Origin: Squalus acanthias
Taxonomy: Eukaryota
DNA length: 64,000 nucleotides
Reading direction: 5' to 3'
Assembly (NCBI GenBank): GCA_030390025.1
Contig: JASTWF010000069.1
Span: 992,001 to 1,056,000, forward strand
Numbering within the stretch: the stretch's first letter is position 1; each line of letters begins with the position of its first letter. The notes beneath the pieces were generated by a model. That model had not been told where the DNA came from and made no database searches. It worked only from the letters and a program-made list of their open reading frames with translations. The position numbers and the translations under genes were made by a program. This document shows positions 1 through 49,971 of this stretch, piece by piece.

Positions 1-194
1 ACTCCAAGGATCACAATCGTGAGTCGTCACAGTTTCGCCATCGGACCCGGCTGTCTGGAGACCTGAGAGATGGTGACTGTTCCCTGATTATAAACAACAT
101 CACACAGCGAGACGCAGGACCTTATTATTTCAGAATAGAATTTGACAACAGTGATCTGTTTAACTACTACCCTGAACACAGCTTCATGTTTCTG
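1..194 (+). CDS. Siglec-like gene A, V-set Ig exon (5'-partial; 1-bp deletion near the 3' end)
   Basis: Frame from nt 3: SKDHNRESSQFRHRTRLSGDLRDGDCSLIINNITQRDAGPYYFRIEFDNSDLFNYYP. It has the Siglec E-strand Cys (DCSL) and the F-strand essential Arg (YYFRIE). Donor TCTG|GTAAGT at 194/195. Near-identical to the V exons at 32812-33177 and 42800-43165. Confidence 0.9.
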
Positions 195-994
195 GTAAGT
201 GCTGGGTTATAATTACTCCACAATTCACGCTCAACAGTCAGTGGGAAATAACATAAACTGTGGCGGTTACACATTAACACAAAACACAGCTTATTATAAC
301 ACAGCGTCTGATTATCAATAACCTGGCGATACCTTCCAGTTCAGTCCTAAAGCAACCTCTAATACTCACTTTATTATCAATGATTGAATGTCTTGACTGT
401 GTCCATCATTGTTATCAGGTTATCGACTCCTATCTATCTCTCTAATTGTGTTTAAAAGTCTTACATACAGACAAAAGACAGTCTCACATTTCTCCAGCAC
501 CTTTCACCACCTCAGGAGGTCCCAAAGCGCTTCACAGACAATGAAGTTCTTTTTTTGAAGTGTGGTCACTGTTGTAATGTAGGAAACGTGGCAGCCAGTT
601 TGCGCACAGCAAGCTCCCACAAACAGCAATGTGATAATGACCAGAACATCTGGTTTAACACTTCAAAAGTACTTCATTGGCTGTGAAGCGCTTTGGGACG
701 TCCTGAGGTCATGAAATGCGCTGTAGGAATGCAAGTCTTTCTTTTATGTTTTGGTTGAGTGATCATTGCAAATTGTTTCTGTCCTGCCGTGGAGAAGATT
801 TAATTTAACATTGGCAGAGATCTCTGAGCGAGTGGAGAGCCAGTGTTCCTGGGGCTGTGACCAGGTCCTCCACCCCGAACCAGTATTGTCAATTCAAGTA
901 TCTCAGAGAGAAAGTGCATTAAGCTCAGTGACAGACACTCCGCAAACCCTGGAAATAGGAAACAATGTTTTCTTATACATTCACACAAAGTTAC

Positions 995-1450
995 ATAGAG
1001 ACTACCGCTCAGAAAGAGGCCATTCAGCACAACTGGTCCATCCCGGTGTTTATGCTCCACACCAGCCTCCTCCCACCCCTCTTCATCTCACCCCATCAAC
1101 ATATCCTTCTATTCCTTTCTCCCTCATGTGTTTATTCAGCTTCCCCTTAAATGCATCTCTGCTCTTCGCCTCAACCACTCCCTGTGGTAGCGAGTTCCCC
1201 ATTCTCACCACTCTCTGGGGAAAGAAGTTTCTCCTGAATTCCCTATTGGATTTATCAGTGACTATCTTATATTGATGGCCCCTAGTTCTGGTCTCCCCCA
1301 CAAGTGGAAACATCTTCTCTACGTCTACCCTATCGAAACCCTTCATAATTTTAAAGACCTCTATCAGGTCACCCCTCAGCCTTCTCTTTTCTAGAGAAAA
1401 GAGCCCCAGCCTGTTCAATCTTTCCTGATCGTTGTAACCTCTCAGTTCTG
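995..1450 (-). mobile_element. CR1 LINE 3' fragment in the V-C2 intron (also present in the paralogous introns at about 31.55-32.0 kb and 41.3-42.1 kb)
   Basis: ORF 1083-1418 LGLFSLEKRRLRGDLIEVFKI...RTRGH is the CR1 ORF2 C-terminus. Confidence 0.85.
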
Positions 1451-1554
1451 GTATTATCCGTGTAAAAGTACTTTCTCTTGCGGGACTGTGATTTCTATTT
1501 GAACTGATGCCTCACGTTATATTTATCTAAAAGGATCCATTCTCTGTGTGTTAG

Positions 1555-1848
1555 ATTTCACAGATAAACCCAGGATATTCCCTGCTGAAATGATTGCAGG
1601 AAAGCGTGTGAACGTAAGCTGCACCTTCAACACCACGTGCACTGGAACAGCACCTGTCTTAACCTGGGTCAATCCCACTGACGTACCCGGGTCAGTCTCA
1701 AACAGTGTAACTCAGCATGGCGTCACTCTGACATATACTTCTGTTCTGTCCCTGATTCCATCACTCAAACACCACGGACAAACTCTCACCTGCAGAGTCA
1801 GATATCCATCTGTTTCATCGGAACAGACCCTCGCACTCACTGTGCAAT
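1555..1848 (+). CDS. Siglec-like gene A, C2-set Ig exon 1 (CD33-type C2 domain)
   Basis: TTAG|ATTTCA acceptor, AAT|GTAAGT donor, phase 1-1, 294 nt. DFTDKPRIF...VSCTFNTTCTG...LTW...HHGQTLTCRV has the extra Cys typical of Siglec domain 2. Confidence 0.92.
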
Positions 1849-2078
1849 GTAAGTACGGATATCCTTAAATTTAATTACCCGTGCTAGTCTACATTGCGCA
1901 CGGCAAGATCCCACAAAGGGCAACATGGTGAGGCCTAGATCAGAAAATTTTTATTGATAAATATTGACAAGAACACTGGGGAGAACACTTCTTTAAATCG
2001 TGTCATCGGATCTTTAACTTCCACCTGAGAGGGCAGATGGGGCCTTTGTTTAACATCTTATCTGAAAGACACCACATC

Positions 2079-2800
2079 CGACAATGCAGTGCTCCCTCAG
2101 TACTGCCCCTGCGACAGTGTGGCGCTCCCGCAGTGCTGCCACTCCAACAGAGCTGCACTGTCTCAATACTGCCCCTCCAACAGTGCTGCACTCCCTCAGT
2201 ACTGCCCCTCCGACAGTGCAGCGCTCCCCCAGTACTGCCCCTCCGACAGTGCGGTGCTCCCTCAGTACTGCCCCTCCGACATTGCGGCGCTCCCTCAGTA
2301 TTGCCCCTCCGACAGTGCGGCGCTCCATCAGTAATGCCCCTCCGACAGTGAAGGTCTCCCTCAGTACTGCCCCTCCGACAGTGCAGCTCTCCCTCAGTAA
2401 TGCCCCGCCGACAGTGCGGCGCTCCCTCAGTACTGCCCCTCCGACAGTGCGGCGCTCCCTCAGTACTGCACCTCCGAAAGTGCGGCGCTCCCTCAGTACT
2501 ACCCCTCCAACAGTGCGGCACTTCCTCAGTACTGCCCCTCCGACAGTGCGGTGCTCCCTCAGTTCTGCCCCTCCGACAGTGCAGTGCTCCCTCGGTACTA
2601 CCCCTCCAACAGTGCGGCACTTCCTCAGTACTGCCCCTCCGACAGTGCGGCGCTCCCTCAGTACTGCCCCTCCGACAGTGCGGCGCTCCCTCAGTACTGC
2701 CCCTCCGACAGTGCGGCGCTCCCTCAGTACTGCCCCTCCGAAAGTGCAGCGCTCCCTCAATACTACCCCTCAGACAGTGCGGCGCTCCCTCAGTGCTGCA
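2079..2800 (+). repeat. 33-bp minisatellite (CAGTACTGCCCCTCCGACAGTGCGGCGCTCCCT)n inside a SINE remnant
   Basis: About 22 tandem units; preceded by SINE body sequence (CCACCTGAGAGGGCAGA...). Confidence 0.95.
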
Positions 2801-2924
2801 CTAAAGTGTCTGCCTGGATTACGTGCTTCGTAATGAAGGAACTTGCTTTGATATCACACCTTTGACGATCTCAGGGTCTCTCAAAGTGCTTCACAGCCGA
2901 TGTAAGTTAACTTTTGCTGATCAT

Positions 2925-3300
2925 CTTAAAGGAGGAGAGAGAGGCGGAGAGGTTGAGGGAGGGAATTCCAGAGCTCGGGACCCAGGCGGCTGAAGGCACG
3001 GCCGCCAATGGTGGAGCGATGGAAATCGGGGGGATGCTCAAGAGGCCAGAATTGGAGGAAGGCAGAGATCTGGGAGTGTTGTAGGGGCTGGTGGAGGTTA
3101 CAGAGATAGTGAGGGGCGAGGGCCATGGAGGGATTGGAACATGAGGATCAGAGTCTTAAATTGGAGGTGTTGCCGGACCGGGAGCCAATGTAGGTCAGCG
3201 AGCAACAGGGGGGTGATGGGTGAGTGGGACACGCGGCAGCAGTTTTCGGAGGGACTGAAGTTTACAGAGGGTGGAAGATGGGAGCGCCGGCCAGGAGAGT
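2925..3300 (-). mobile_element. L2/CR1-group LINE 3' fragment
   Basis: ORF 2926-3126 ...GGRAFSRLGPELWNSLP; related pieces at about 49.5-49.85 kb and 60.1-60.4 kb. Confidence 0.7.
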
Positions 3301-3340
3301 GTGGGAATTACCTGCTGATTCTCCTCTGGTCTTGTTCCAG

Positions 3341-3616
3341 ATCCACCCAAGGAGACGACAGTGGCCATCAGCGGAGCCACGGGCGGAATAAGAGAGGGAA
3401 GCAACATCACGTTAACCTGCTCCAGCGAAAGCGTCCCCCCGGCATCGAGTTACACCTGGTTCAGGATCGACGGAGACACGATCACCCAGTTAAACACAAG
3501 TGCTCGGTCCATCTACTTCAGACACGTAACACGGGAGGATGATGCCGGTTTCTACTGCACAGCGAGGAACCCATTGGGTATCGGCAGGTCCACCATTGTA
3601 CACCTGTGTGTGGAAT
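3341..3616 (+). CDS. Siglec-like gene A, C2/I-set Ig exon 2
   Basis: TTCCAG|ATCC acceptor, GAAT|GTAAGT donor, phase 1-1. YPPKETTVAISG...EGSNITLTCSSESVPPASSYTWF...DAGFYCTARNPLG is a canonical Ig domain. Confidence 0.9.
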
Positions 3617-3969
3617 GTAAGTAGTTTCCTCTGTCTGTCTCTTATTAAAACTCAGGCACTTCCTGTCTGTGAAGAGCGTACATCCTGTCGTCACCTGTCC
3701 AGTGTCCACTTTTCCAGTTAACTCCCGTGTCCACATCACCAATGGACACTGCCTATGTAAACGTCACGCTGTAATTACACCCTCCCACCAGTGGTGACGT
3801 TGCAGTATTCAATCCTTGCGTCTCCCAGCTCCTCAGCCTGTGCTAGGCTCCAACCAACTCTACTCCCCAATTTGGTACAGATTTAATTGGAAATAAAATA
3901 TGACTTTAAAATGGTTACATTTTACAAGCCAATCTATTGCTTATTGAAAGCTACACCTGCGCTCCCTGT

Positions 3970-4870
3970 AGCTGATGACTGCACAGTGTTCAGCGCCATT
4001 CACAACTCCTCAGATAATGAAGCAGTCCATGCCCGCATGCAACAAGACCTGGACGACGTTCAGGCTTGGGCTGATAAGTGGCAGGTAACATTCGCGCCAA
4101 ACAAGTGCCAGGCAATGACCATCTCCAACAAGCGAGAGTCTAACCACCACCCCTTCACATTCAACGGCATTATCATCACTGAATCCCCCCACCATCAACA
4201 TCCTGGGGGGTCACCATTAACCAGAAACTTAACTGGACCAGCCACATAAATACTGTGGCAACAAGACCAGGTCAGAGGCTGGGTATTCTGCAGCGAGTGT
4301 CTCACCTCCTGTCTCCCCAAAGCCTTTCCAACATCTACAAGGCACAAGTCAGGAGTGTGATGGAATACTCTCCACTTGCCTGGATGAGTGCAGCTCCAAC
4401 AACACTCGAGAAGCTCGACACCATCCAGGACAAAGCAGCCCGCTTGATCGGCACCCCATCCACCACCTTAAACATTCACTCCCTCCACCACCGGCGTACC
4501 GTGGCTGCAGTGTGTACCATCTACAAGATGCACTGCAGCAACTCGCCAAGGCTTCTTCAGCAGCACCTCTCAAACCCGCAACCTCTTCCACCTAGAAGGA
4601 CAAGGGCAGCAGGCGCATGGGAACACCACCACCTCCAAGTTCCCCTCTAAGTCACACACCATCCTGACTTGGAAATATATTGGCCGTTCCTTCATCGTCG
4701 CTGGGTCAAAATCCTGGAACTCCCTCCCTAACAGCACTGTGGGAGCACCTTCACCACATGGACTGCAGCGGTTCAAGAAGGCGGCTCACCACCACCTTCT
4801 CAAGGGGCATCTAGGGATGGGCAATAAATGCCGGCCTTGCCAGCGACGCCCACATCCCGAGAATGAATTA
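3970..4870 (+). mobile_element. CR1-superfamily LINE (second family), 5'-truncated RT C-terminus and 3' end
   Basis: ADDCTVFS...WADKWQVTFAPNKC; IYKAQVRSVMEYSPLAW; frameshifted. Confidence 0.8.
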
Positions 4871-5544
4871 AAAATAAAATTTACAGGACAGAAATTATTT
4901 TGTGATTCACGTGAGATGGTGTGTGTACGTGAGAAGTGAGCTGGATCAAGTCATTTCCCTCAAGCCTGTGATCGCTCCCTGAGTAAAGATGACTTGATTC
5001 GCGCAGTGCACTGTACTGGCTACTTCATCTCACCCCATCAACACATCCTTCTATTCCTTTCTCCCTCGTGTGTTTATCCAGCTTCCCCTTAAATGCATCG
5101 CTGCGATTCGCCGCAACCACTCCCTGCGGTGGCGGGTTCCACATTCTCCCCACTCTCTGGGTAACGAGCAGAAGTGATTATTAAGCGGGGCGTGTAACGG
5201 GAGTCCGATCCGATAGCGCCCCAACTGCACAACTGCCCGTCATGAATTTTCACCCTGTGATAAATGTTTCCAGATCATTCTACAGCACAACCCTGCACAC
5301 GTCAATAGATCAGGACCTTGGACAGGGTGTAAAACAGTCCACTAACGCCAGCGTTCCACCCTGAGGAGCGAGTTACAATTGCTCCCTCTCACAGTGTTTG
5401 CCATGAAATCATTCCTTACAGATGTTTTAGTCGATGTATGAATGTGACACCAAATATTCCAGTAATATTAAGCTTGATTGCTGATCGCACAGCGAGGGAT
5501 CGAAAGCGGAGAGTAAGTCATCGTTTCTTGCTGTATGTTTCCAG

Positions 5545-5714
5545 GCACTCTGCACACGATTCAGATCCTGGGAATACGAGCTGCGATATTCATTCTCGCC
5601 GTCATCGCCACTGTCACTGGGGTTCGCGTCTGGGACCGAAGACCAGCTAAAGGAAGCCGAGAGCCTGTTGAGAGCTGTGAGGATACGGGAGTCGATCGGG
5701 AATCAGCGGCCTGA
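5545..5714 (+). CDS. Siglec-like gene A, terminal exon: transmembrane helix with Arg plus short Tyr-free tail (activating type)
   Basis: TTTCCAG|GC acceptor; phase 1 matches the previous exon. Translation (C)TLHTIQILGIRAAIFILAVIATVTGVRVWDRRPAKGSREPVESCEDTGVDRESAA*, Arg codon at 5577-5579, TGA at 5712-5714. Confidence 0.82.
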
Positions 5715-15270: not shown

Positions 15271-15284
15271 GACTTTGCTGACTT

Positions 15285-20463: not shown

Positions 20464-20706
20464 TCACTGAAATCTGATCTCTGCGTATTCCGTTCCCTCG
20501 TCCTTGTCGACAGTCCCGTCGACGTTGGGCAGCTTTAAGAATTTGATGCTGGCGTACAGAAGGTCCTCATGCTTGGTGGGTTGTCCATGTCCAGCATCTC
20601 CTCCCGCCCGACCTTCAGAGAGACCCCGGGGAGCTGGTGTCTCCGCCTCGCTCGTTGCCTCACTGGTTACATTCCAGGAGTCAGGAACCATCCCGCACTG
20701 CGAACC
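20464..20706 (-). CDS. Siglec-like gene B, terminal exon with ITIM (LLYASI) and ITSM/ITIM-like motif (TEYAEI)
   Basis: TTTGTAG|GGT acceptor, phase 0. GSQCGMVPDS...HEDLLYASIKFLKL...DEGTEYAEIRFQ* has the same two-motif layout as CD33-related Siglec tails. Confidence 0.9.
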   Translation of the reverse strand, partial: GSQCGMVPDSWNVTSEATSEAETPAPRGLSEGRAGGDAGHGQPTKHEDLLYASIKFLKLPNVDGTVDKDEGTEYAEIRFQ

Positions 20707-22261: not shown

Positions 22262-22343
22262 CTGGTGCTTGGCGGAGAGTGGACTGGAGGTCATTGCAAT
22301 GTCACTGGGCTCTGAAGCTCTCTCCTCATTCGCTGCCTTTCTC
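22262..22343 (-). CDS. Siglec-like gene B, cytoplasmic exon 1
   Basis: TATTTCAG|G acceptor, CCAG|GTACAG donor; phase 2-0 fits both neighbours. RKAANEERASEPSDIAMTSSPLSAKHQ. Confidence 0.82.
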
Positions 22344-22814: not shown

Positions 22815-22911
22815 TTTCGCACGCACATAAAGATTACGAATCCAGCCAGTGCAACGCTCAGTGCGATCCCAGCAGCAAGCAATCCTACTCTCCATTCATT
22901 GCCGTCTCCAC
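22815..22911 (-). CDS. Siglec-like gene B, transmembrane exon (uncharged helix)
   Basis: TTTTTCCAG|GT acceptor, GAAA|GTAAGT donor, phase 1-2. GGDGNEWRVGLLAAGIALSVALAGFVIFMCVRK. Confidence 0.88.
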
Positions 22912-30120: not shown

Positions 30121-30414
30121 CTGCAGACTCATGTTCCACAGTGATGGTTATGGTCCACTCCACTGCTCCATGTCCATTCTCCGCCACACACTGATAGTCT
30201 CCAGCGACCCTGGGTGTAACGTGAGGAATCTCCAACCACAGCTCATTGTTGGAACTTGTTCTGTTCAGTGTGACACCATGATGTCGCCAGGTCAGGTTAG
30301 AAGCCGGGAAGCTCGCGACAGAGCAGAGTATCGCTGTAGAATTCCCTTCTTTTATATGGATCAATGAATTTTTAATCGCATCACGAGAAGTAATGGAGAG
30401 ATTCCGTGGGGCGT
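30121..30414 (-). CDS. Siglec-like gene B, membrane-proximal Ig exon
   Basis: CTTTAG|AC acceptor. YAPRNLSI...EGNSTAILCSVASFPASNLTW...AGDYQCVAENGHG...ITVEHESA. Donor GCAG|GTACTT keeps phase 1. Confidence 0.85.
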
Positions 30415-31157: not shown

Positions 31158-31451
31158 ATTGCAAAGTGACTGCGAGGGTCTGCTCCGATGAAACAGATGG
31201 ATATCTGACTCTGCAGGTGAGAGTTTGTCCATGGTGTTTGAGTGATGGGATCAGGGACAGAACAGAAGTATATGTCAGAGTGACGCCATGCTGAGTTACA
31301 CTGTTTGAGACTGACCCGGGTACGTCAGTGTGATTGACCCAGGTTAAGACAGGTGCTGTTCCAGTGCACGTGGTGTTGAAGGTGCAGCTTACGTTCACAC
31401 GCTTTCCTGCAATCATTTCAGCAGGGAATATCCTGGGTTTATCTGTGAAAT
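31158..31451 (-). CDS. Siglec-like gene B, C2-set exon (proximal copy)
   Basis: Within ORF 31138-31458; phase 1-1; about 97% aa identity to the other two C2 exons. Confidence 0.92.
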
Positions 31452-32811: not shown

Positions 32812-33177
32812 CAGAAACATGAAGCTGTGTTACAGGGCAGTAGTATAACTGATCACTGTTGTTAAATTCTATTCTGAAATAATAAGGTCCTGCGTCTCGC
32901 TGTGTGATGTTGTTTATAATCAGGGAACAGTCACCATCTCTCAGGTCTCCAGACAGCCGGGTCCGATGGCGAAACTGTGGCGACTCATGATTGTGATCCT
33001 TGGAGTGAAAGGCTATAGGCGATGAACTCTGTTCGTCATAATTATACCAGATTCCAACTTGTGGTTGGTTTGCCAGACGCGATGGAAAAGTGTAATGACA
33101 TGGAATCTGTGCACACAAACCTTCCTGTGCTGTCACCTCTCGTGGAGTCTCGCCTTTCCACTCCTCTGACAATACAG
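32812..33177 (-). CDS. Siglec-like gene B, V-set exon (proximal copy, V2)
   Basis: Within ORF 32750-33196; intact AG/GT sites, 366 nt. GLCAQIPCHY, DCSL and GPYYFRIE (essential Arg) are present. Confidence 0.92.
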
Positions 33178-35005: not shown

Positions 35006-35009
35006 TTGA

Positions 35010-38000
35010 CTGCACTGTCGGAGGGGCGGTACTGAGCGAGCGCTGCACTGTCAGAGGGGAGGTACTGAGGGAGCGCCGCACTGTCGGAGGGTCAGTACTG
35101 AGGGAGCGCCGACCTGTCGGAATGGCTGTACTGAGGGATCGCTGCACTGTTGGAGGGGGAAGTACTGAGGGGGCGCCGCACTATCGGAGGGGCAGGACTG
35201 AGGGAGCTACGCACTGTTGGAGGGACAGTACTGAGTGAGCGCTGCACTGTCGGAGGGGCAGTACTGAGTGAGCGCCGCACTGTCGGAGGGGCAGCACTGA
35301 GGCAGCGCTGCACTTTCGGAGGGGAGATACTGAGGGAGCGCCGCACTGTCGGAATGGCTGTACTGAGGGATCGCTGCACTGCTGAAGGGGGTAGTACTGA
35401 GGGAGCGCTGCACTGTCGGAGGGGCAGTACTGAGGGAGCGCTGCACTGTCAGAGGGGCAGTACTGAGGGAGCGCCGCACTGTCGGAGGGTCAGTACTGAG
35501 GGAGCGCCGCACTGTCGGAGGGGCGGAACTGAGGGAGCGCCGCACTGTCGGAGGGTCAGTACTGAGGGAGCGCCGCACTGTCAGAGGGGCAGTACTGAGG
35601 GAGCGCCGCACTGTGGGAGGGGCAGTACTGAGGGAGCGCCGCACTGTCAGAGGGACATTACAGATGAAGCGGCGCACTGTCGGAGAGGCAGTACTGAGGG
35701 AGCGCCGCACTGTTGGAGGGACAGTACTGAGGGAGCGCTGCACTGTTGGAGCAGCAGTACTGAGGGAGCGCTGCACTGTCGGAGGGGCAGTACTGAGGGT
35801 GCGCTGCACTGTCTGAGGGGCTTATACTGAGGGAGTGCTGCACTGTCGGAGGGGCAGTACTGAGGGAGCGCCGCACTGTCGGAAGGGCAGTACTGAGGGT
35901 GCGCTGCACTGTCTGAGAGGCTTGTACTGAGGGAGCGCTGCACTGTCGGAGGGGCAGTACTGAGGGAGTGCCGCACGGTCGAAGGGACAGTACTGAGGGA
36001 GCGCCGCACCATCAGAGGGGCAGGACTGACGGAGCGCCGCACAGTCAGAGGGGCAGTACTGAGTGAGCGCCGCACTGTCGGAGGGGCAGTACTGAGGGAG
36101 CGCCGCACTTTCAGAGGGGCATTACTATTGGAGCGCCGCACTATAGCAGGGGCAATACTGAGGGAGCACCGCACTGTCGGAGGGGCAGTACTGAGGGAAC
36201 GCCGCACTGTCGGAGGGGCAGTACTGATGGAGCGCCGCACTGTCGGAGGGGTAGTACTGAGTGAGCTCTGCACTGTCGGAGGGGCAGTACTGCGGGAGCG
36301 CAGCACTGTCGGAGGGGTAGTACTGAGGGAGCGCCGCACAAGCGGATGGGCAGTACTGAGGGAGCGCCGCACTTTCAGAGGGGCATTACTGATGGAGCTC
36401 CGCACTGTCGGAGGGCAGTACTGAGTGAGCGCTGAACTGTCGGAGGGGCATTACTGAAAGGAGCGCCGCACTGTCGGAGGGGCAGTACTGTCGGAGGGGC
36501 AGTACTGAGGGAGCGCCGCACTGTCGGAGGGCCAGTACTGAGGGAGCGCCGCACTGTCGTAGGGGCAGTACTGAGGGAGCGCCGCACTGTCGGAGGGCCA
36601 GTACTGAGGGAGCGCTGCACTGTTGGAGGGGCAGTACTGAGGGAGCGCCGCACTGTCGGAGGGGCAGTACTGAGGGTGCGCTGCACTGTCTGAGGGGCTT
36701 GTACTGAGGGAGTGCTGCACTGTCGGAGGGGCACTACTGAGGGAGCGCCGCACTCTCGGAAGGGCAGTACTGAGTGAGCGCCGCACTGTCGGTGGGGCAG
36801 TACTGAGGGAGCGCCGCACTTTCAGAGGGGCATTACTGATGGAGCGCCGCACTGTCTAAGGGGCAGTACTGAGGGAGTGCCGCACTGTCTGAGGGGCAGT
36901 ACTGAGGGAACGCCGCACTGTCGGAGGGGCAGTACTGAAGGAGCGCCGCACTTTCGGAGGGGCAGTACTGAGTGAGCGCTGCACTGTCGGAGGGGCAGTA
37001 CTGCGGGAGCGCCGCACTGTCGGAGGGGCAGTACTGAGGGAGCGCTGCACTGTCGGAGAGGCAGTACTGAGGGAGCACCGCTCTGTCGGTGGGTCAGTAC
37101 TGAGGGAGCGCCGCACTGTCGGAGGGGTAGTACTGAGGGAGCGTCGCACTGTCAGAGGGGCAGTACTGAGTGAGCGCTGCGCTGTCGAAGGGTCATTACT
37201 GAGGGAGCGCCGCACTGTCGGAGGGGCGGCACTGAGGGAGCGCCGCACTGTCAGAGGGGCATTACTGAGGGAGCGCCGCACTGTCGGAGTGTCAGTACTG
37301 AGGGAGCGCCGCACTGTTGGAGGGACAGTACTGAGGGAGCGCTGCACTGTCGGAGGGGCAGTACTGAGGGAGCGCCGCACTGTTGGAGGGGCAGTACTGA
37401 GGGTGCGCTGCACTGTCTGAGGGGCTGTACTGAGGGAGCGCTGCACTGTCGGAGGGGCAGTACTGAGGGAGCGCCGCACTGTCTGGAAGGGCAGTACTGA
37501 GTGAGCGCCGCACTGTCGGTGGGGCAGTACTGAGGGAGCGCCGCACTTTCAGAGGGGCATTACTGATGGAGCGCCGCACTGTCGGAGGGGCAGTACTGAG
37601 GGAGTGCCGCGCTGTCTGAGGGGCAGTACTGAGGGAACGCCGCACTGTCGGAGGGGCAGTACTGAAGGAGCGCCGCACTTTCGGAGGGGCAGTACTGAGT
37701 GAGCGCTGCACTGTCGGAGGGGCAGTACTGCGGGAGCGCAGCACTGTCGGAGGGGCAGTACTGAGGGAGCGCCGCACTGTCGGAGGGGCAGAACTGCGGG
37801 AGCGCAGCACTGTCGGAGGGGTAGTACTGAGGGAGCGCCGCACAAGCGGATGGGCAGTACTGAGGGAGCGCCGCACTTTCAGAGGGGCATTACTGATGGA
37901 GCGCCGCACTGTCGGAGGGCAGTACTGAGTGAGCGCTGAACTGTCGGAGGGGCATTACTGAAAGGAGCGCCGCACTGTCGGAGGGGCAGTACTGTCGGAG

Positions 38001-40680
38001 GGGCAGTACTGAGGGAGCGCCGCACTGTCGGAGGGCCAGTACTGAGGGAGCGCCGCACTGTCGTAGGGGCAGTACTGAGGGAGCGCCGCACTGTCGGAGG
38101 GCCAGTACTGAGGGAGCGCTGCACTGTTGGAGGGGCAGTACTGAGGGAGCGCCGCACTGTCGGAGGGGCAGTACTGAGGGTGCGCTGCACTGTCTGAGGG
38201 GCTTGTACTGAGGGAGTGCTGCACTGTCGGAGGGGCACTACTGAGGGAGCGCCGCACTCTCGGAAGGGCAGTACTGAGTGAGCGCCGCACTGTCGGTGGG
38301 GCAGTACTGAGGGAGCGCCGCACTTTCAGAGGGGCATTACTGATGGAGCGCCGCACTGTCTAAGGGGCAGTACTGAGGGAGTGCCGCACTGTCTGAGGGG
38401 CAGTACTGAGGGAACGCCGCACTGTCGGAGGGGCAGTACTGAAGGAGCGCCGCACTTTCGGAGGGGCAGTACTGAGTGAGCGCTGCACTGTCGGAGGGGC
38501 AGTACTGCGGGAGCGCCGCACTGTCGGAGGGGCAGTACTGAGGGAGCGCTGCACTGTCGGAGAGGCAGTACTGAGGGAGCACCGCTCTGTCGGTGGGTCA
38601 GTACTGAGGGAGCGCCGCACTGTCGGAGGGGTAGTACTGAGGGAGCGTCGCACTGTCGGAGGGGCGGCACTGAGGGAGCACCGCACTGTCAGAGGGGCAT
38701 TACTGATGAAGCGCCGCACTGTCGGAGTGTCAGTACTGAGGGAGCGCCGCACTGTTGGAGGGACAGTACTGAGGGAGCGCTGCACTGTCGGAGGGGCAGT
38801 ACTGAGGGAGCGCCGCACTGTCGGAGGGGCAGTACTGAGGGTGCGCTGCACTGTCTGAGGGGCTTGTACTGAGGGAGTGCTGCACTGTCGGAGGGGCAGT
38901 ACTGAGGGAGCGCCGCACTCTTGGAAGGGCAGTACTGAGTGAGCGCCGCACTGTCGGTGGGGCAGTACTGAGGGAGCGCCGCACTTTCAGAGGGGCATTA
39001 CTGATGGAGCGCCGCACTGTCGGAGGGGCAGTACTGAGGGAGTGCCGCACTGTCTGAGGGGCAGTACTGAGGGAACGCCGCACTGTCGGAGGGGCAGTAC
39101 TGAAGGAGCGCCGCACTTTCGGAGGGGCAGTACTGAGTGAGCGCTGCACTGTCGGAGGGGCAGTACTGCGGGAGCGCCGCACTGTCGGAGGGGCAGTACT
39201 GAGGGAGCGCTGCACTGTCGGAGAGGCAGTACTGAGGGAGCACCGCTCTGTCGGTGGGTCAGTACTGAGGGAGCGCCGCACTGTCGGAGGGGTAGTACTG
39301 AGGGAGCGTCGCACTATCAGAGGGGCAGTACTGAGTGAGCGCTGCGCTGTCGAAGGGGCATTACTGAGGGAGTGCGACACTGTCGGAGGGGCAGTACTGA
39401 GGGAGCGCCGCACTGTCGGAGGGGCAGTACTGAGGGAGAGCCGCACATTCTGAGTGGGAGCACTGAGGGAGTGCGACACTGTCGGAGGGGCAATACTGAG
39501 GGAGCGCTGAACTGTCGGAGAGGGAGTACTGAGGGAGCGCTGCAATGTCGGAGGGGCGGTACTGAGTGAGACCGGCACTGTCAGAGTGGCATTACTGATG
39601 GAGCGCCGCACTGTCGGATGGGCAGTACTGAGGGAGCACCGCACTGTTGGAGGGGCAGTACAGAGGGAGAGCCGCACTGTCGGAGGGGCAGTACTGAGGG
39701 AGCGCGGCACTGTCGGAGGGGCAGTACTGAGGGAGCGCCGCACTGTCGGCGGGGCAGTACTGAGGGAGCGCCGCACTGTTGGAGGGTCAGTACTGAGGGA
39801 GCCCCGAACTGTCGGAGGGGCAGTACTGAGGGAGCACCGCACTGTCCGAGGGGCAGTACTGAGGGTACGCTGCACTATCTGAGGGGCAGTACTGAGGGAG
39901 TGCTGCACTGTCGGAGGGGCAGTACTGAGGGAGCGCCGTACTTTCGGAGGGGCAGTACTGTGTGAGCGCTGCAATGTCGGAGGGGCATTACTGAAAGCAG
40001 CGCCGCACTGTCGGAGGGGCAGTACTGAGGGAGCGCCGCACTGTCTGAGGGACAGTACTGAGGGAGCGCCCCACTGTCGGAGGGGCAGTACTGAGGGAGC
40101 GCTGCACTGTCAGACGGGCAGTACAGAGGGAGCACCGCACTGTTGGAGGGCCAGTACTGAGGGAGCGCCGAACTGTCAGAGGAGCTGTACTGAGGGAGCG
40201 CCGCTCTGTCGGAGCGGCAGGACTGAGAGAGCGCCGCTCTGTCAGAGGGGCAGTACTGAGTGAGCGCCGCACTGTCAGAGGGGCATTACTGATGGAGCGC
40301 TGCACTGTCGGAGGGTCAGTACTGAGGGAGCGCCACACTGTTGGAGGGGCAGTACTGAGGGACCGCTGCACTGTCGGAGGGGCAGTACTGTGGGAGCTCC
40401 GCACTGTCAGAGGGGCATTACTGAGGGAGCTCCGCACTTTCAGAGGGGCAGTACTGATGGTGCGCCGCACTGTCGGAGGGTCAGTACTGAGGGAGCGCCG
40501 CACTGTCGGAGGGGCAGTACTGAGGGAGCGCCGCACTGTCAGAGGGGCAGTACTGAGGGAGAGCTGCACTTTCGGAGGGGCTGTACTGAGGGAGCGCTGC
40601 ACTGTTGGAGGGGCAGTACTGAGGGAGCGCCGCACTGTCGGAGGTTCAGTACTGAGGGAGCGCCGCACTGTTGGAGGTGC
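35010..40680 (-). repeat. Large 33-bp minisatellite array (about 5.7 kb, about 170 units) with higher-order duplication
   Basis: Tandem 33-mers; identical translations recur at an offset of 1504 nt (36375/37879, 36451/37955, 36833/38337). Confidence 0.95.
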
Positions 40681-40881: not shown

Positions 40882-41175
40882 ATTGCAAAGTGAGTGCGAG
40901 GGTGTGCTCCGATGAAACAGATGGATATCTGACTCTGCAGGTGAGAGTTTGTCCGTGGTGTTTGAGTGATGGAATCAGGGACAGAACAGAAGTATATGTC
41001 AGAGTGACGCCATGCTGAGTTACACTGTTTGAGACTGACCCGGGTACGTCAGTGGGATTGACCCAGGTTAAGACAGGTGCTGTTCCAGTGCACGTGGTGT
41101 TGAAGGTGCAGCTTACGTTCACACGCTTTCCTGCAATCATTTCAGCAGGGAATATCCTGGGTTTATCTGTGAAAT
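40882..41175 (-). CDS. Siglec-like gene B, C2-set exon (distal copy)
   Basis: Within ORF 40862-41182; same splice sites as 1555-1848; 2 aa differences from the gene A copy. Confidence 0.9.
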
Positions 41176-42799: not shown

Positions 42800-43165
42800 C
42801 AGAAACATGAAGCTGTGTTACAGGCCAGTAGTTATACGGATCACTGTTGTCAAATTCTATTCTGAAATTATAAGGTCCTGCGTCTCGCTGTGTGATGTTG
42901 TTTATAATCAGGGAACAGTCACCATCTCTCAGGTCTCCAGACAGCCGGGTCCGATGGCGAAACTGTGACAACTCACGATCGTGATCCTTGGAGTGAAAGG
43001 CTATAGACCATGAGCTCCATTTCACATTATTAAACCAGACTCCAACTCGCGGTTGGTTTGCCAGACGCGATGGATAAGTGTAATGACATGGAATCTGTGC
43101 ACACAAACCTTCCTGTGCTGTCACCACTCGTGGTTTCTCGCCTTTCCACTCCTCTGACAATACAG
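42800..43165 (-). CDS. Siglec-like gene B, V-set exon (distal copy, V1)
   Basis: CTCCCAG|CT acceptor, TCTG|GTAAGT donor, 366 nt, phase 1-1. AVLSEEWKGEKPRVVTAQEGLCAQIPCHY...DCSL...GPYNFRIE...TQLHVS has the CD33-like GLCxxxPC motif and the essential Arg. Confidence 0.92.
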
Positions 43166-45883: not shown

Positions 45884-48800
45884 ATTTAGGGATGTAATTA
45901 ATACAAGCAGAATTTAGGGAGCTAGGAGCTAAATTAAAAAGTAGGACCTCTAAGGTAGTAATCTCTGGATTGCTACCAGGGCCACGTGCTAATCAGAATA
46001 GAGAGAACAGGATAGTGAGATTGAATACGTGGCTTGAGCAGTGGTGCAGGAGGGAGGGATTCAAATTCCTGAGGCATTGGAACCAGTTCTGGGGGAAGTG
46101 GGACCTGTACAAAAGGGACGGTCTGCACTTGGGCAGGACTGGAACCGATGTCCTCGGGGTAATATTTGCTAAAGCAGTTCGGGAGGATTTAAACTAATAT
46201 GGCAGGGGAATGGGAACCTATGTAGCGAAACAGGGGGAAGTAATATGCAGTCAGAAACAAATGTTAGAAGGGTGAGAAACAATAGGGGAAGGCCGAGTAA
46301 ACAAAGGCAAGAAACACAAAGGGCCATACTAAATCATAAGTCTAAAAGGACAAAGGATGTTAATAAAACAAGCCTAAAGGCTCTGTGTCTTAATGCAAGG
46401 AGTATCCGTAATAAGGTGGATGAATTGACTGTGCAAATAGATGTTAACGGATACGATGTGATTGGGATTACAGAGACGTGGCTCCAGAACAATCAAGGAT
46501 GGGAACTGAACATCCAGGGGTATTCAACATTCAGAAAGGATAGAATAAAAGGAAAAGTGGGTGGGGTAGCATTGCTGGTTAAAGAGGAGATTAATGCAAT
46601 AGCTAGGAAGGACATCAGCTTGGAGGATGTGGAATCAATATGGGTTCAGCTGCAGAACACCAAAGGGCAGAAAACGTTAGTGGGAGTTGTGTACAGACCT
46701 CCAAACAGCAGTAGTGAGGTGGGGGAGGGTATGAAACAGGAAATCAGAGGTGCGTGCAAAAAAGGCACGGCAGTTATCATGGGTGACTTTAATATGCATA
46801 TAGATTGGGCTACTCAAACTGGAAGCAATACGGTGGAGGAGGATTTCCTGGAGTGTTTAAGGGATGGTTCCTAAACCAATATGTTGAGGAACCAACTCGA
46901 GGGGAGGCCATCCTGGACTGGGTGTTGTGTAATGAGGAAGGACTAATCAGCAATCTTGTGGTACGAGGCCCCCTGGGGAAGAGTGACCATAGTATGGTGG
47001 AGTTCTACATTAGGATGGAGAAGGAAACAGTTAAGTCAGAGACCATGGTCCAGAACTTAAATAAGGGCAACTTTGAGGGTATGAGGCGTGAATTGGCGAG
47101 GTTAAATTGGCAAGCGATATTTAAGGGGCTATCAGTGGAAGGGCAATGGCAGACATTTAGAGATCGCATGGATGAACTACAACAATTGTACATCCCGGTC
47201 TGGCGTAAAAATAAAAAAGGGAAGGTGGCTCAACCATGGCTAACAAGGGAAATCAGGGATAGTATTAAAACCAAGGAAGTTGCATACAAATTGGCCAGAA
47301 GTAGCAGCAAACCTGGGGACTGGGAGAACTTCAAAACTCAGCAGAGGAGGACGAAGGGTTTGATTAGGGCAGGGAAAATAAAATATGAAAGGAAGCTTGC
47401 AGAGAACATTAAAATAGACTGCAAAAGCTTCTATAAATATGTAAAAAGAAAGAGGTTAGTAAAAACAAACGTAGGTCCCCTGCAGTCGGAAAAAGGGGAA
47501 GTCGTAATGGGGAACAAGGAAATGGCTGATCAATTGAACAAGTACTTTGGTTCGGTGTTTACTGTGGAGGACACACACAACCTGCCGGAAATAAAAGGGG
47601 TCAGAGGATCTGGTAAGAGGGAGGAGCTGAGGGAAATCCTTATTAGTCGGGAAAAGGTATTGGGGAAATTGATGGGACTGAAGGCTGAAAAATCCCCGGG
47701 GCCTGATGGTCTGCATCCCAGAGTACTTAAGGAGGTGGCCTTGGAAATAGTGGATGCATTGACGATCATTTTCCAACATTCTTTAGACTCTGGATCAGTT
47801 CCGATGGAGTGGAGGGTGGCCAATGTAACCCCTCTTTTTAAAAAAGGAGGGAGGGAGAAAGCAGGGAATTATAGACCGGTCAGCCTGACATCGGTCGTGG
47901 GTAAAATGATGGAAGCAATTATTAAAGATGTCATAACAGAGCATTTGGAAAGTGGCGACATGATAGGTCCAAGTCAGCATGGATTTGTGAAAGGGAAATC
48001 ATGCTTGACAAATCTTCTGGAATTTTTGAGGATGTTTCCAATAGGGTGGACAGGGGGGAACCAGTAGATGTGGTGTATTTGGACTTTCAGAAGGCCTTCG
48101 ACAAGGTCCCACACAAGAGATTGGTGAGCAAAGTTAAAGCACATGGGATTGGGGGTAATGTGTTGACGTGGATTGAGAACTGGTTGGCACACAGGAAACA
48201 AAGAGTAGGAGTAAATGGGTACTTTTCAGAATGGCAGGCAGTGACCAGCGGGGTACCGCAGGGTTCGGTGCTGGGACCCCAGCTGTTTACATTATATATT
48301 AATGATTTGGACGAAGGGATTAAATGTAATATCTCCAAATTTGAGGATGACACTAAATTGGGAGGCAGTGTGAACAATGAGGAGGATGCTAGGAGGCTAC
48401 AGAGTGACTTGGACAGGTTGGGTGAATGGGCAAATGTATGGCAGATGAAGTACAATGTGGATAAATGTGAGGTTATCCACTTTGGTGGTAAAAATAGAGA
48501 GGCGGACTATTACCTGAATGGTGGCAGATTAGGGAAAGGGGAGGTGCAACGAGACCTGGGCATCATGGTACATCAGTCACTGAAGGTGGGAATGCAAGTG
48601 CAGCAGGCAGTCAAGAAAGCAAACGGAATGATGGCCTTCATAGTAAGGGGATTTGAGTACAGGAGTAGGGAGGTGATGCTGCAGTTGTACAGGGCCTTGG
48701 TGAGGCCACACCTGGAGTATTGTGCGCAGTTTTGGTCTCCTAACTTAAGGAAGGACATTCTTGCTATTGAGGGAGTGCAGCGAAGGTTCACTAGATTGAT

Positions 48801-49280
48801 TCCTGGGATGGCCGGACTGACATATCAAGAAAGATTGGGTCAACTGAACTTGTATCCTCTGGAGTTCAGAAGAATGAGGGGGGATCTTATAGAGACATTT
48901 AAAATCCTGACTGGTTTAGACAAATTAGATGCGGGCAGAATGTTCCCAATGGTAGGGAAAACTAGAACCAGGGGTCACAGTCTAAGGATTAAGGGGAAGC
49001 CATTTAGGACTGAGCTGAGGAGGAACTTCTTCACCCAGAGAGTGGTGAATCTATGGAATTCTCTTCCACAGAAGGTTGTTGAGGCCAGTTCGCTAAATAT
49101 ATTCAAAAGGGAGTTAGATATAACACTCACAACTAAGGGGATCAAGGGGTATGGCGAGAAAGCAGGAATGGGGTACTGAGGTAGCATGTTCAGCCATGAA
49201 CGCATTGAATGGCGGTGCAGGCTCGAAGGACCGAATGGTCTACTCCTGTACCTATTTTCTATGTTTCTATGTTTCTATGT
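45884..49280 (+). mobile_element. Near full-length CR1 LINE: ORF1 C-terminus (SGNH esterase-like) and frameshifted ORF2
   Basis: 45970-46197 ...WDLYKRDGLHL; ORF2 in three pieces (46245-46874, 46805-48067, 48001-49179; FEDD in place of FADD); (TTTCTATG)n tail; empty site at about 59885. Confidence 0.93.
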
Positions 49281-49931
49281 AACTGCACAGCAGATCAGAG
49301 GCAAACAGAGAAACTGTATATATGACACCTTTATATACTTCCTGTCTTATTTGCTTGTTATCTTAACCACATCTTGTACCCTTACCACGATTGCTATCAT
49401 CCTGAGAATGGGCAGTAATTGTGAGGACTGAACTGCCTGTCTATTCTCAGCACTGCTGTGCTGTCATCATGGCGAATTGTAACTAAAATTTGGATCTGTG
49501 TAATACACCAATTCTGGCCTCTTGTCCATCCCCGAGTTTTGGAAGGGAATTCCAGAGCTTAGGGTCTAGACGTCTGAAGGCACGGCCGCCATTGTTGGAG
49601 CGATGGAAATCGGGAAGGCACAAGAGGCCAGAATGGGTGGAACGCAGAGATCTCGGAGGCTTGCAGGGCTGGAGGAGGTTACAAAGATAGTGAGGCAGGG
49701 GGCGAGGCCAGGGAGTGATTTGAAGACGAGGATGAGCATTTTAAATTTGGGGCGTTGCCGGACCGGGAGCCAATGTAGATCAGTGAGCGCAGGGTTGAGA
49801 AGTGAACGGGACTTGGTGCGAGTTAGGACACTGGGTCACTGCTGAATTTGGTCCCCAATCATAGCTCAATAAGAATGATCTTTCACAAAGACTATTAACC
49901 ATATGTATGTCCGAGCTGACGATGATATTAC

Positions 49932-49971
49932 CTTGGAGGAGTGACAGGAGGAAGTAAGATTTTCTGATCAT
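49932..49971 (-). CDS. Siglec-like gene B, signal-peptide exon
   Basis: ATG at 49971, MIRKSYFLLSLLQ+G, donor CAAG|GTAATA (phase 1). It joins the V exon to give MIRKSYFLLSLLQAVLS-EEWKG, a typical signal peptide. An acceptor CTTTCAG lies at 50014, so the exon probably spans 49932-50013 with 5'UTR. Confidence 0.8.

What the first reader, a model, noticed from the sequence alone, without database searches (positions are those of the whole stretch)
1..49971. Paired activating/inhibitory CD33-related-type Siglec system in an apparent cartilaginous fish
Seen: two convergent genes share almost identical V-set and first C2 exons (2-3 aa differences in C2) and most of the intervening intron, but have unrelated membrane-proximal Ig, TM and tail exons. 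Gene B has an uncharged TM and an LLYASI + TEYAEI tail. Gene A has a TM Arg and a short tail with no Tyr. The Siglec hallmarks are present: GLCxxxPC, E-strand DCSL, F-strand Y-x-F-R-I-E with no F-strand Cys, and an extra Cys in domain 2. Known: this is the logic of the human SIGLEC5/14 and SIGLEC11/16 pairs, which are kept alike by gene conversion and are thought to counter sialic-acid-mimicking pathogens. Inference: an independently evolved or very ancient paired-Siglec system in sharks. I do not know whether it has been described.
Basis: partly seen in the sequence, partly recalled or inferred. Interest (0 to 1): 0.92.

Follow-up and report, generated by a model that had tools for sequence, protein, structure and literature searches.

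The report
Paired Siglec-like receptor genes in a shark
A shark genome region holds an inhibitory sialic-acid-receptor-like (Siglec-like) gene facing an activating-type partner that shares its binding module, a pairing so far described in mammals, although the activating copy here carries a frame-breaking one-base deletion.

Summary
There are three 92-99% identical V+C2 cassettes, not two. The - strand has one leader (49971-49932), two tandem V-C2 cassettes, a third Ig exon, an uncharged TM, an 82-nt cytoplasmic exon this finding omits, and a tail with LLYASI and TEYAEI. The convergent + strand gene A shares its cassette at 96% (exons and intron), then has an unrelated Ig exon and a TM with Arg and a Tyr-free tail.

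RNA-like contigs stop exactly at 3341, 3616 and 5545, so gene A is transcribed and spliced. Its V exon lacks one base (between 174 and 175), which breaks the frame.

Sequence, fold and cysteine pattern place V and C2 in the Siglec family. All named close relatives are elasmobranch proteins that NCBI already labels Siglec, CD33-like or MAG-like. The Arg-TM exon recurs in two other sharks. V domains group by lineage, not by signalling type.

Membership in the CD33-related subgroup is unresolved. I found no paper on this. The scan has similar unchecked notes elsewhere in this genome.

The parts
1..194 (+). Gene A, 3' part of the V-set exon (its 5' part and the leader lie before the window). It carries YYFRIEF. 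One base is missing between 174 and 175 relative to cassettes B and C, so the exon ends in phase 0 instead of phase 1.
1555..1848 (+). Gene A, C2-set exon (phase 1-1), 98-99% identical to the two - strand C2 exons.
2077..2799 (.). 33-bp minisatellite just downstream of gene A's C2 exon. The same array follows the C2 exons of cassettes B and C.
3341..3616 (+). Gene A, third Ig exon (Ig_3/Ig_2 type, unrelated to gene B's third Ig). RNA-like contigs begin and end exactly at these edges.
5545..5714 (+). Gene A, TM plus tail exon: ILGIRAAIFILAVIATVTGV with one Arg, a short tail without Tyr, stop at 5712-5714. RNA-like contigs start exactly at 5545.
49932..49971 (-). The only leader exon found on the - strand: MIRKSYFLLSLLQ plus 1 nt, with a GT donor.
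42800..43165 (-). Cassette C, V-set exon (intact, phase 1-1).
40882..41175 (-). Cassette C, C2-set exon (intact).
35012..40677 (.). 5.7-kb array of the 33-bp minisatellite lying between cassette C and cassette B.
32812..33177 (-). Cassette B, V-set exon (EGLCAQIPC, DCSL, YYFRIEF).
31158..31451 (-). Cassette B, C2-set exon. Its three Cys align with domain 2 of MAG and CD33.
30121..30414 (-). Gene B, third Ig exon. Best solved matches are MAG domain 3 and Siglec-8 domain 3.
22815..22911 (-). Gene B, stalk plus uncharged TM exon (VGLLAAGIALSVALAGFVIFMCV); it ends in phase 2.
22262..22343 (-). Gene B, first cytoplasmic exon (RKAANEERASEPSDIAMTSSPLSAKHQ).
20464..20706 (-). Gene B, last exon: LLYASI (ITIM), TEYAEI (distal ITIM/ITSM-like motif), then stop.
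   Evidence: motif comparison from PMC2722167

Best explanation
The window is part of a multigene Siglec-family cluster of a shark.

The - strand carries one inhibitory receptor gene:
- leader 49971-49932;
- two tandem lectin cassettes (V+C2 at 43165-40882 and at 33177-31158);
- a third Ig exon;
- an uncharged TM;
- two cytoplasmic exons, ending in an ITIM (LLYASI) and a distal TEYAEI motif.

The inferred mechanism is this. The V domain binds a sialylated ligand through the conserved F-strand Arg. The phosphorylated tail then recruits SHP-type phosphatases.

Facing it tail to tail on the + strand is gene A. Its V+C2 cassette is 96% identical in DNA to the - strand cassettes, intron included. 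Its 3' half is a different and older module: another Ig exon, then a TM exon with one Arg and a short Tyr-free tail. This is the activating type, which would pair with an acidic-TM ITAM adaptor (inferred).

The shared 5' block with unrelated, cross-species-conserved 3' modules means the lectin cassette was recently copied or converted between an inhibitory and an activating gene. That is the Siglec-5/14 logic.

In this genome gene A is transcribed and spliced, but its V exon has a 1-bp deletion. It is most likely a transcribed pseudogene or a null allele.
For: Gene models:
- AG/GT sites and matching phases at every exon.
- tblastn with six elasmobranch relatives finds exactly these 12 exon intervals and no others.

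Siglec identity:
- Pfam V-set 2.7e-14 and Ig_CD22 1.6e-8.
- The best 17 of the 60 solved-structure rows shown are all Siglecs: CD33 2.6e-14, MAG 3.7e-14, sialoadhesin 2.5e-13, then Siglec-8, -5, -10 and -7.
- The Arg of YYFRIE aligns with that of CD33 YFFRME.
- All three Cys of C2 align with MAG and CD33 domain 2.
- The AlphaFold model has pLDDT 87.8. Its five best Foldseek matches are sialoadhesin V-sets, TM 0.80-0.86.

Tail:
- LLYASI and TEYAEI compare with human Siglec-5/-9 LHYASL and TEYSEI (PMC2722167, passage).
- 10 of 39 family representatives keep a TEYA..-type distal motif.

Activating module:
- ILGIRA.IFI... TM exons with tails of 15-19 residues occur in S. torazame and C. punctatum proteins.

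Exchange:
- 96.1% identity over 1869 columns, ending near the third exon.
- In the careful V tree the S. torazame TM-Arg protein is sister to a S. canicula ITIM protein (100/96). The C. punctatum TM-Arg protein sits with orectolobiform ITIM proteins (94/93).

Expression:
- Contigs of runs X15 and X16 lie on 3341-3616 with 27-56 extra letters at the ends, or start at 5545.
- They have no depth in intron bins.
- A DNA contig of run X2 runs through 5464-5647.
Against: - Gene A's V exon is frame-broken. None of four runs shows an insertion there, including a DNA sample independent of the best holder. So the pair is not intact in this genome.
- The joint 3616>5545 itself is not among the rows shown: 15 joints were listed and 333 were not.
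- No RNA evidence was obtained for the - strand gene. It is unknown whether both of its cassettes enter one mRNA.
- Akula et al. 2014 found no FcR gamma chain in the shark genomes then available (PMC4016189, passages). I could not test for DAP12 or FcR gamma, so an adaptor is unproven.
- The excess of amino-acid changes in V (25 nonsynonymous to 3 synonymous) is not significant against neutrality (one-sided P = 0.105).
- A 4% divergence is also what an old-enough plain duplication would give.
- Sialic-acid binding is untested. 3 of 25 aligned relatives lack the Arg.
Confidence: 0.7

Rival explanations
1. Plain duplication and decay. An inverted segmental duplication placed a copy of the V-C2 cassette in front of an older TM-Arg gene's 3' exons, or the reverse. 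This happened once, with no continuing gene conversion and no selective 'pairing'. The copy is now decaying, as the 1-bp deletion shows.
For: - Divergence is uniform at about 4% across exon and intron, with no indel in the 1360 intron bases between A and B.
- The V exon is frame-broken.
- The locus is full of LINE fragments and minisatellites that favour rearrangement.
Against: - V domains of TM-Arg and ITIM proteins group by lineage in two separate shark lineages (100/96 and 94/93). That needs repeated exchange or repeated birth of pairs.
- The TM-Arg exon is conserved across shark species.
- Gene A is still transcribed and correctly spliced.
Confidence: 0.2
2. Separate use of the two - strand cassettes. 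They are not translated together. They are alternative, mutually exclusive ligand-binding cassettes under one leader, or cassette C is a dead duplicate that is skipped.
For: - Only one leader was found.
- All four exons are phase 1-1, so any combination stays in frame.
- The V exons differ at 22 of 121 residues, mostly in the region aligned to the C-C' part and the G strand.
Against: - Both cassettes are intact open exons with good splice sites.
- Predicted proteins of other elasmobranchs and of a turtle carry two to four V domains in one chain. These are automatic gene models.
Confidence: 0.4
3. Siglec-like in fold only. The family has moved to a non-sialic-acid ligand, for example a protein, so the pathogen-mimicry logic does not apply.
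For: - No binding data exist.
- 3 of 25 aligned relatives have E or G in place of the Arg.
- The ectodomain is only about 30% identical to any solved Siglec.
Against: - The Arg, the flanking Y-x-F-R-[IV]-E motif and the Siglec cysteine pattern are kept in 22 of 25 rows.
- They are kept in all three cassettes of the window.
Confidence: 0.12
4. Assembly artefact. The repeated cassettes are falsely duplicated haplotypes or a misjoin.
For: The region is very repeat-rich.
Against: - The copies differ by 1-8% and by a 427-nt and a 143-nt indel, and they have different neighbours.
- An independent DNA sample holds 0.73 of the words of 1-6000.
- RNA-like contigs carry gene A's private exons.
Confidence: 0.03

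Closest known systems
Human SIGLEC5 / SIGLEC14 paired receptors
   Same: - An inhibitory ITIM-bearing gene and an activating-type gene with a basic TM residue share nearly identical N-terminal Ig domains and differ downstream.
- PMC4042635 (search listing and start of abstract only) calls them polymorphic paired inhibitory/activating receptors.
- That the two human genes are homogenised by gene conversion, and that a SIGLEC14 null allele exists, is recalled, not read here.
   Different: - Shark lineage and convergent orientation.
- The shared block ends before a third Ig exon of a different type.
- The inhibitory gene has two tandem V-C2 cassettes.
- The activating copy has a 1-bp deletion.
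- The adaptor is unknown.
CD33-related Siglecs (tail type of human Siglec-5 and Siglec-9)
   Same: - Membrane-proximal LHYASL and distal TEYSEI in the human proteins (PMC2722167, passage), against LLYASI and TEYAEI here.
- V-C2(-Ig) architecture.
- V best hit in the Protein Data Bank is CD33.
   Different: - The ectodomain is no closer to CD33 than to MAG or sialoadhesin (56.3, 55.8 and 53.1 bits; C2 and the third Ig lean to MAG).
- No tree with mammalian members could be built.
- Synteny was not examined.
Myelin-associated glycoprotein (Siglec-4)
   Same: Best or joint-best solved match for V, C2 and gene B's third Ig.
   Different: - The window's genes are three-Ig-domain (gene A) or up to five-domain (gene B) genes of a multigene family, with ITIM/TEYxEI or TM-Arg ends.
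- Sharks also have separate 'MAG-like' proteins that fall outside the window's clade.
NCBI-predicted elasmobranch 'sialic acid-binding Ig-like lectin', 'CD33-like' and 'MAG-like' proteins
   Same: - Examples: XP_078093145.1 (Mustelus asterias), XP_038670873.1 (Scyliorhinus canicula), XP_072326180.1 (S. torazame, TM-Arg), XP_072409577.1 (Chiloscyllium punctatum, TM-Arg).
- They are 54-70% identical in V.
- They share the leader (MIGKSYFLLSLLQ...), the C2, both TM types and the same tail.
   Different: - They are automatic gene models with borrowed mammalian names.
- None is identical to the window's genes.
- I found no paper that describes them as a paired system.
SIGLEC11 / SIGLEC16 with the SIGLEC16P pseudogene allele
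   Same: An activating partner kept similar by gene conversion and inactivated by a small deletion in many people. This is recalled; only the title of Hayakawa et al. 2017 was seen, in a reference list.
   Different: Primate-specific. Whether the shark deletion is polymorphic is unknown.

Membership tests
Siglec family (I-type lectins) | N-terminal V-set Ig domain most similar to Siglec V-sets | tested here: met
   - Pfam V-set 2.7e-14 and Ig_CD22 1.6e-8.
- The best 17 of the 60 PDB rows shown are Siglecs; the next is pIgR at 2.7e-8.
- The top 5 Foldseek matches are sialoadhesin V-sets, TM 0.80-0.86.
Siglec family (I-type lectins) | Conserved F-strand Arg that binds the sialic-acid carboxylate | tested here: met
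   YYFRIE (A, B) and YNFRIE (C) align with CD33 YFFRME. The Arg is kept in 22 of 25 aligned family rows. That this Arg is the essential residue is established knowledge, partly supported by the passage on Siglec-15 R143 in PMC7226832.
Siglec family (I-type lectins) | Cysteine pattern: two Cys in GLCxxxPC, an E-strand Cys, no F-strand Cys, and a third Cys in domain 2 for the inter-domain bond | tested here: met
   Present in all cassettes and aligned with CD33 and MAG. The bonds themselves cannot be shown with these tools.
Siglec family (I-type lectins) | Arg-dependent binding of sialylated glycans | not testable with these tools
   Needs V-Fc fusions, wild type and with the Arg replaced, on glycan arrays.
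CD33-related Siglec subgroup | Cytoplasmic ITIM plus a membrane-distal ITIM/ITSM-like TEYSEI-type motif | tested here: met
   LLYASI and TEYAEI in the last exon, against LHYASL and TEYSEI of human Siglec-5/-9 (PMC2722167).
CD33-related Siglec subgroup | Groups with mammalian CD33-related Siglecs to the exclusion of MAG, CD22, Siglec-1 and Siglec-15 | tested here: inconclusive
   - Scores to CD33, MAG and sialoadhesin are equal within 3 bits for V.
- C2 and the third Ig lean to MAG.
- Deep nodes of the V tree have support 36/6.
- No mammalian sequences were among the 150 representatives returned.
CD33-related Siglec subgroup | Lies in the conserved CD33-related gene cluster (synteny) | not tested
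   No flanking non-Siglec gene was found in the window. Neighbouring windows were not read.
Paired activating/inhibitory receptors (Siglec-5/14 type) | Near-identical ligand-binding domains on genes with opposite signalling ends | tested here: met
   96.1% over 1869 columns, then unrelated exons. ITIM tail against TM Arg with a Tyr-free tail.
Paired activating/inhibitory receptors (Siglec-5/14 type) | Both partners encode intact proteins | tested here: not met
   1-bp deletion in gene A's V exon: it ends in phase 0 against a phase-1 acceptor. No run shows the missing base. A GT four bases further on (199-200) would restore the phase; this was not tested.
Paired activating/inhibitory receptors (Siglec-5/14 type) | Basic TM residue pairs with an ITAM adaptor (DAP12 or FcR gamma) | not testable with these tools
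   One Arg in ILGIRAAIF. Akula et al. 2014 found no FcR gamma in sharks. No adaptor search was possible without typing a sequence.
Paired activating/inhibitory receptors (Siglec-5/14 type) | Homogenisation of the binding domains within a lineage (concerted evolution) | tested here: inconclusive
   V domains of the two TM-Arg proteins group with ITIM proteins of their own lineage (100/96 and 94/93). This rests on one V domain per automatic gene model, and on two species of one genus for the first pair.

The most novel reading that the evidence does not exclude
Cartilaginous fishes own a large CD33-related-type Siglec family. Two ancient signalling modules are conserved across shark orders: an ITIM plus TEYxEI tail, and an Arg-TM short tail. 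Lectin cassettes are repeatedly copied between these modules within each lineage. Some receptors carry two tandem lectin cassettes under one leader. If so, the paired-Siglec arms-race logic, and CD33-type inhibitory Siglecs themselves, would date to the base of jawed vertebrates rather than to tetrapods or mammals. Their absence from teleosts would then be a loss.
Probability: 0.4. Interest if true: 0.8.

Novelty: new variant of a known kind. Interest (0 to 1): 0.62.

Why it matters
Published comparative work that I could read holds that only Siglec-1, CD22, MAG and Siglec-15 are regularly present in fish, and that fish genomes lack CD33-related inhibitory Siglecs. This is PMC7226832 (abstract start and passages), a study of teleosts.

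A shark locus, and by the scan's own unchecked notes many such loci, shows three things:
- a CD33-type ITIM/TEYxEI tail;
- a conserved Arg-TM counterpart;
- a freshly shared lectin cassette.

That would push this receptor logic back to the jawed-vertebrate root. It would also offer an independent system to test whether paired Siglecs arise wherever sialic-acid mimicry by pathogens exists. The tandem V-C2 cassettes pose a new question: one receptor with two lectin domains, or alternative cassettes.

Limits:
- The genes are already predicted and named in public shark annotations.
- The activating copy here is broken.
- All function is inferred.

Tried and rejected
- Direct splicing of the TM exon (22815) to the tail exon (20706) is rejected. 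The donor is phase 2 and the tail exon phase 0. The 82-nt exon 22343-22262 solves this, and P0005 residues 288-321 support it.
- A leader next to cassette B: a scan for ATG...GT with a hydrophobic peptide in 33178-35100 and 43166-45100 gave nothing signal-like. A motif scan of all six frames found one leader only, at 49971.
- The search for homologous proteins with gene A's third Ig exon gave no hit: 2 candidates, none scored. The length window and word index make this blank uninformative. I left the other two searches of that tool unused, because shark and mammalian Siglecs share almost no 5-residue words.
- A tree with mammalian CD33-related Siglecs, CD22, Siglec-1 and Siglec-15 could not be made.
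- The quick 147-row tree and the careful 32-row tree leave all deep nodes open.
- Positive selection on V: 25 nonsynonymous to 3 synonymous changes, ratio 2.45, one-sided P = 0.105. V is more diverged than the C2 exon (P = 0.0005) and the upstream flank (P = 0.002), but not clearly more than the intron (P = 0.069).
- Depth in bin 1-200 of the RNA-like runs cannot be assigned to gene A, because about 100 bases there are identical in all three cassettes.
- The ESM Atlas look-up of the tail exon gave best scores of 0.76-0.79, below the level the tool calls a lead.
- Scan notes hold no ITAM adaptor for this genome.
- Cao and Crocker 2011 (PMC3015071) is not held.
- Supplementary files were not opened. 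Supplementary file 9 of PMC8455134, which lists gene families including Siglecs, may bear on what is already reported for sharks.

Full report
WHAT IS IN THE SEQUENCE

The window is repeat-rich vertebrate DNA. It holds LINE fragments, one apparently intact EN+RT open reading frame, and long 33-bp and 43-bp minisatellites.

A self-comparison shows three copies of a V-exon/intron/C2-exon cassette, not two:
- Cassette A lies on the + strand at 1-1868.
- Cassette B lies on the - strand at 33177-31158.
- Cassette C lies on the - strand at 43165-40882.
- A matches B at 96.1% over 1869 columns.
- B matches C at 94.5-97.1% in three blocks.

By part, A against B is identical at 187 of 194 V bases, 1303 of 1360 intron bases and 288 of 294 C2 bases. 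The A-B similarity runs on through the 33-bp minisatellite. It stops about 20 nt before gene B's third exon: A 2213-2912 matches 31133-30434 at 88%.

GENE MODELS

Every exon below has an AG acceptor, a GT donor and a fitting phase.

Gene A (+ strand):
- V exon, up to 194. The window cuts off its start and the leader.
- C2 exon, 1555-1848.
- A third Ig exon, 3341-3616.
- A last exon, 5545-5714. It encodes ILGIRAAIFILAVIATVTGV, a short tail without Tyr, and a stop.

The - strand has a single leader, found by a motif taken from relatives' N-termini: 49971-49932, MIRKSYFLLSLLQ plus one base. After it come:
- V_C and C2_C.
- A 5.7-kb minisatellite.
- V_B and C2_B.
- A third Ig exon, 30414-30121.
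- An uncharged TM exon, 22911-22815.
- A last exon, 20706-20464, carrying LLYASI and TEYAEI.

The TM exon ends in phase 2 and the last exon starts in phase 0. So an 82-nt exon at 22343-22262 must lie between them. It encodes RKAANEERASEPSDIAMTSSPLSAKHQ, which matches residues 288-321 of a basking-shark relative.

tblastn with six relatives finds these 12 exon intervals and nothing else. All searches and the fold were done exon by exon.

THE BREAK IN GENE A

Against B and C, cassette A lacks one base between 174 and 175. This is not in a homopolymer run. The exon therefore ends in phase 0, while the C2 acceptor needs phase 1.

In the laid runs no insertion is reported at that place. All four runs have depth in bin 1-200, including a DNA sample from another study than the best holder. 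So the deletion is not contradicted and is probably real. Contigs can hide variants, however.

A GT four bases further on (199-200) would restore the phase. Whether it is used is unknown.

EXPRESSION

Runs X15 and X16 are labelled only as guessed RNA. They behave as RNA:
- They have no depth in intron bins 201-400, 801-1000 and 5201-5400.
- One 359-nt contig lies on exactly 3341-3616, with 27 and 56 further letters that do not continue on the genome.
- Two other contigs start at 3341 or end at 3616, each with 30 further letters.
- Two contigs start exactly at 5545.
- By contrast, a DNA contig of run X2 runs through 5464-5647.

So gene A's private exons are transcribed and spliced at the predicted edges. 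The joint 3616>5545 itself is not among the 15 joints shown; 333 were not shown.

Depth over 1-200 cannot be assigned to gene A, because about 100 bases there are identical in all three cassettes.

The one call allows 6000 letters, and that gene spans far more. The junction 30121>22911 is supported only by splice signals and phase. There is one further hint: a Chiloscyllium protein has the same kind of third Ig domain directly followed by the same kind of TM.

FAMILY

V exon evidence:
- Pfam V-set (2.7e-14) and the CD22-type first Ig model (1.6e-8).
- Of the 60 best solved-structure rows, the first 17 are Siglecs: CD33 2.6e-14, MAG 3.7e-14, sialoadhesin 2.5e-13, then Siglec-8, -5, -10 and -7. 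The next is pIgR at 2.7e-8.
- The printed alignment puts EGLC..PC, CSL and YYFRIE on the same motifs of CD33.
- A model of V_B (pLDDT 87.8) has sialoadhesin V-sets as its five best Foldseek matches.

Other exons:
- C2 matches domain 2 of MAG and CD33, with all three cysteines aligned.
- Gene B's third Ig matches MAG domain 3 and Siglec-8 domain 3.
- Gene A's third Ig is a general C2/I-type domain, closest to CEA, FCRL5 and CD22 d6-d7.

So membership in the Siglec family is met at the level of sequence and fold. The subgroup is open. V scores to CD33, MAG and sialoadhesin lie within 3 bits of each other, and C2 and the third Ig lean to MAG. Only the tail is CD33-related in type. Human Siglec-5 and -9 carry LHYASL and TEYSEI (PMC2722167, passage).

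RELATIVES

An HMMER scan of 1.84 billion representatives with V_B gave 1439 hits at E up to 0.001, and 33 at E up to 1e-30.

Of the 20 close representatives I looked up, 19 carry names and all 19 are sharks or rays. One is an unnamed Logan contig. NCBI calls them Siglec-8/10/11/12/13/14, CD33-like, MAG-like, CD22-like or hemicentin-like. The best identity is 70% (Mustelus asterias), so the window's species is none of these.

Ten more distant representatives are:
- three shark MAG-like or Schwann-cell-myelin-protein-like proteins and one shark CD22-like protein;
- a paddlefish CD22-like protein;
- two teleost hypothetical proteins;
- a frog 'Siglec-12';
- a turtle CD22-like protein;
- an arowana 'Siglec-6'.

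Both signalling ends recur in other species:
- ILILGIRA.IFIV... with a tail of 15-19 residues in S. torazame and C. punctatum.
- LLYASI-type plus TEYA..-type tails in 10 of 39 family representatives, many of which are partial models.

Several automatic models carry two to four V domains in one chain.

EXCHANGE BETWEEN THE TWO TYPES

In a careful V-domain tree of 32 rows, the window's two - strand V domains are sisters (98/88). They lie inside a 13-row, shark-only clade (97/93).

The S. torazame TM-Arg protein is sister to a S. canicula ITIM protein (100/96). The C. punctatum TM-Arg protein sits among orectolobiform ITIM-type proteins (94/93).

So the 3' modules are old and the lectin domains are young. 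This is what repeated copying or conversion of the cassette between the two gene types would give. A single locus cannot separate gene conversion from duplication with exon shuffling. The 33-bp minisatellite sits directly after each C2 exon and is a plausible recombination substrate; this is inference.

DIVERGENCE OF V

V_B and V_C differ at 22 of 121 residues, from 25 nonsynonymous and 3 synonymous changes (ratio 2.45). The differences cluster in the stretch after the C strand and in the G strand.

V is more diverged than the C2 exon (P = 0.0005) and the 223-bp upstream flank (P = 0.002). It is only marginally more diverged than the intron (P = 0.069). The nonsynonymous excess is not significant (P = 0.105).

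LITERATURE

Five searches found no paper on Siglec pairs in cartilaginous fish:
- Siglec with cartilaginous fish;
- Siglec with shark;
- Siglec with elasmobranch;
- Siglec with teleost, CD33 and phylogenetic;
- CD33-related with fish, evolution and paired receptors.

What the papers I read say:
- The whale-shark genome paper only lists Siglecs among Ig-domain families gained in jawed vertebrates (PMC8455134, passage).
- Bornhöfft et al. 2020 state that fish regularly have Siglec-1, CD22, MAG and Siglec-15, and that fish genomes lack CD33-related Siglecs (PMC7226832, passages). Their fish are teleosts.
- Akula et al. 2014 found no FcR gamma chain in shark genomes (PMC4016189, passages). This leaves the adaptor for a TM-Arg receptor open.

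Most subscription papers are not in the library, so 'not in print' holds only for these searches.

The scan itself holds 86 unchecked notes that fit 'siglec' in this genome. They include notes on this window that independently list the third cassette, the deletion, the fast V exons and the outer-face Arg.

VERDICT

This is a real, transcribed Siglec-family locus of a shark. It has an inhibitory gene and a convergent activating-type partner that share a recently exchanged lectin cassette. The partner is frame-broken here. The subgroup, the ligand and the adaptor are all unproven.

It is a new variant of a known kind. It is already predicted in public annotations, but as far as I could search it has not been described.

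Noticed in passing
window 2077-2799, 21059-22039, 30547-31133, 35012-40677, 50846-51521: The same 33-bp minisatellite occurs five times. It directly follows each of the three C2 exons, and also lies in the intron before gene B's tail exon and upstream of the leader. The largest array is 5.7 kb (171 copies). Its position at the edges of the shared block suggests a role in the rearrangements.
   Followed up: partly
window 9634-11567 and 53087-57951: A 43-bp minisatellite forms two arrays (45 and 113 copies) in opposite orientation, about 85% alike.
   Followed up: no
window 60595-63546 (+): An uninterrupted 983-aa LINE open reading frame with endonuclease and reverse-transcriptase domains, so possibly an active element. 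Truncated relatives lie at 27447-29171, 46245-49179, 19332-20222 and 25437-26651.
   Followed up: partly
window 1823: All four laid runs read G where the window has A, a synonymous site in gene A's C2 exon. B and C have G there, so the contigs may come from the other cassettes, or the assembly base may be a rare variant.
   Followed up: no
proteins P0035, P0162, P0076: Three of 25 aligned family members have E or G in place of the F-strand Arg. This recalls the Arg-mutated Siglecs of mammals (the mammalian comparison is recalled, not read here).
   Followed up: no
proteins P0001-P0007, P0021, P0026, P0032: Automatic gene models of sharks, rays, a turtle and a frog carry two to four Siglec-type V domains in one chain (V-V-V-C2, V-V-C2-Ig, V-C2-V-C2-V-Ig). 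If real, multi-lectin Siglecs are widespread outside mammals.
   Followed up: partly
window 32812-32850 (-), V_B: Cassette B has an extra Cys (LYYCPVT) near the G strand. Cassettes A and C have Y or W there.
   Followed up: no
window 8036-8262 and 58863-59496: A perfect 113-bp tandem duplication, and a 28-bp minisatellite of 23 copies.
   Followed up: no
window 41342-41768 and A 763-905: Cassette C's V-C2 intron has a 427-nt insertion and lacks 143 nt relative to A and B. A and B have no indel against each other over 1360 intron bases. All three cassettes share a LINE 3' fragment in that intron, so the element predates the duplications.
   Followed up: partly
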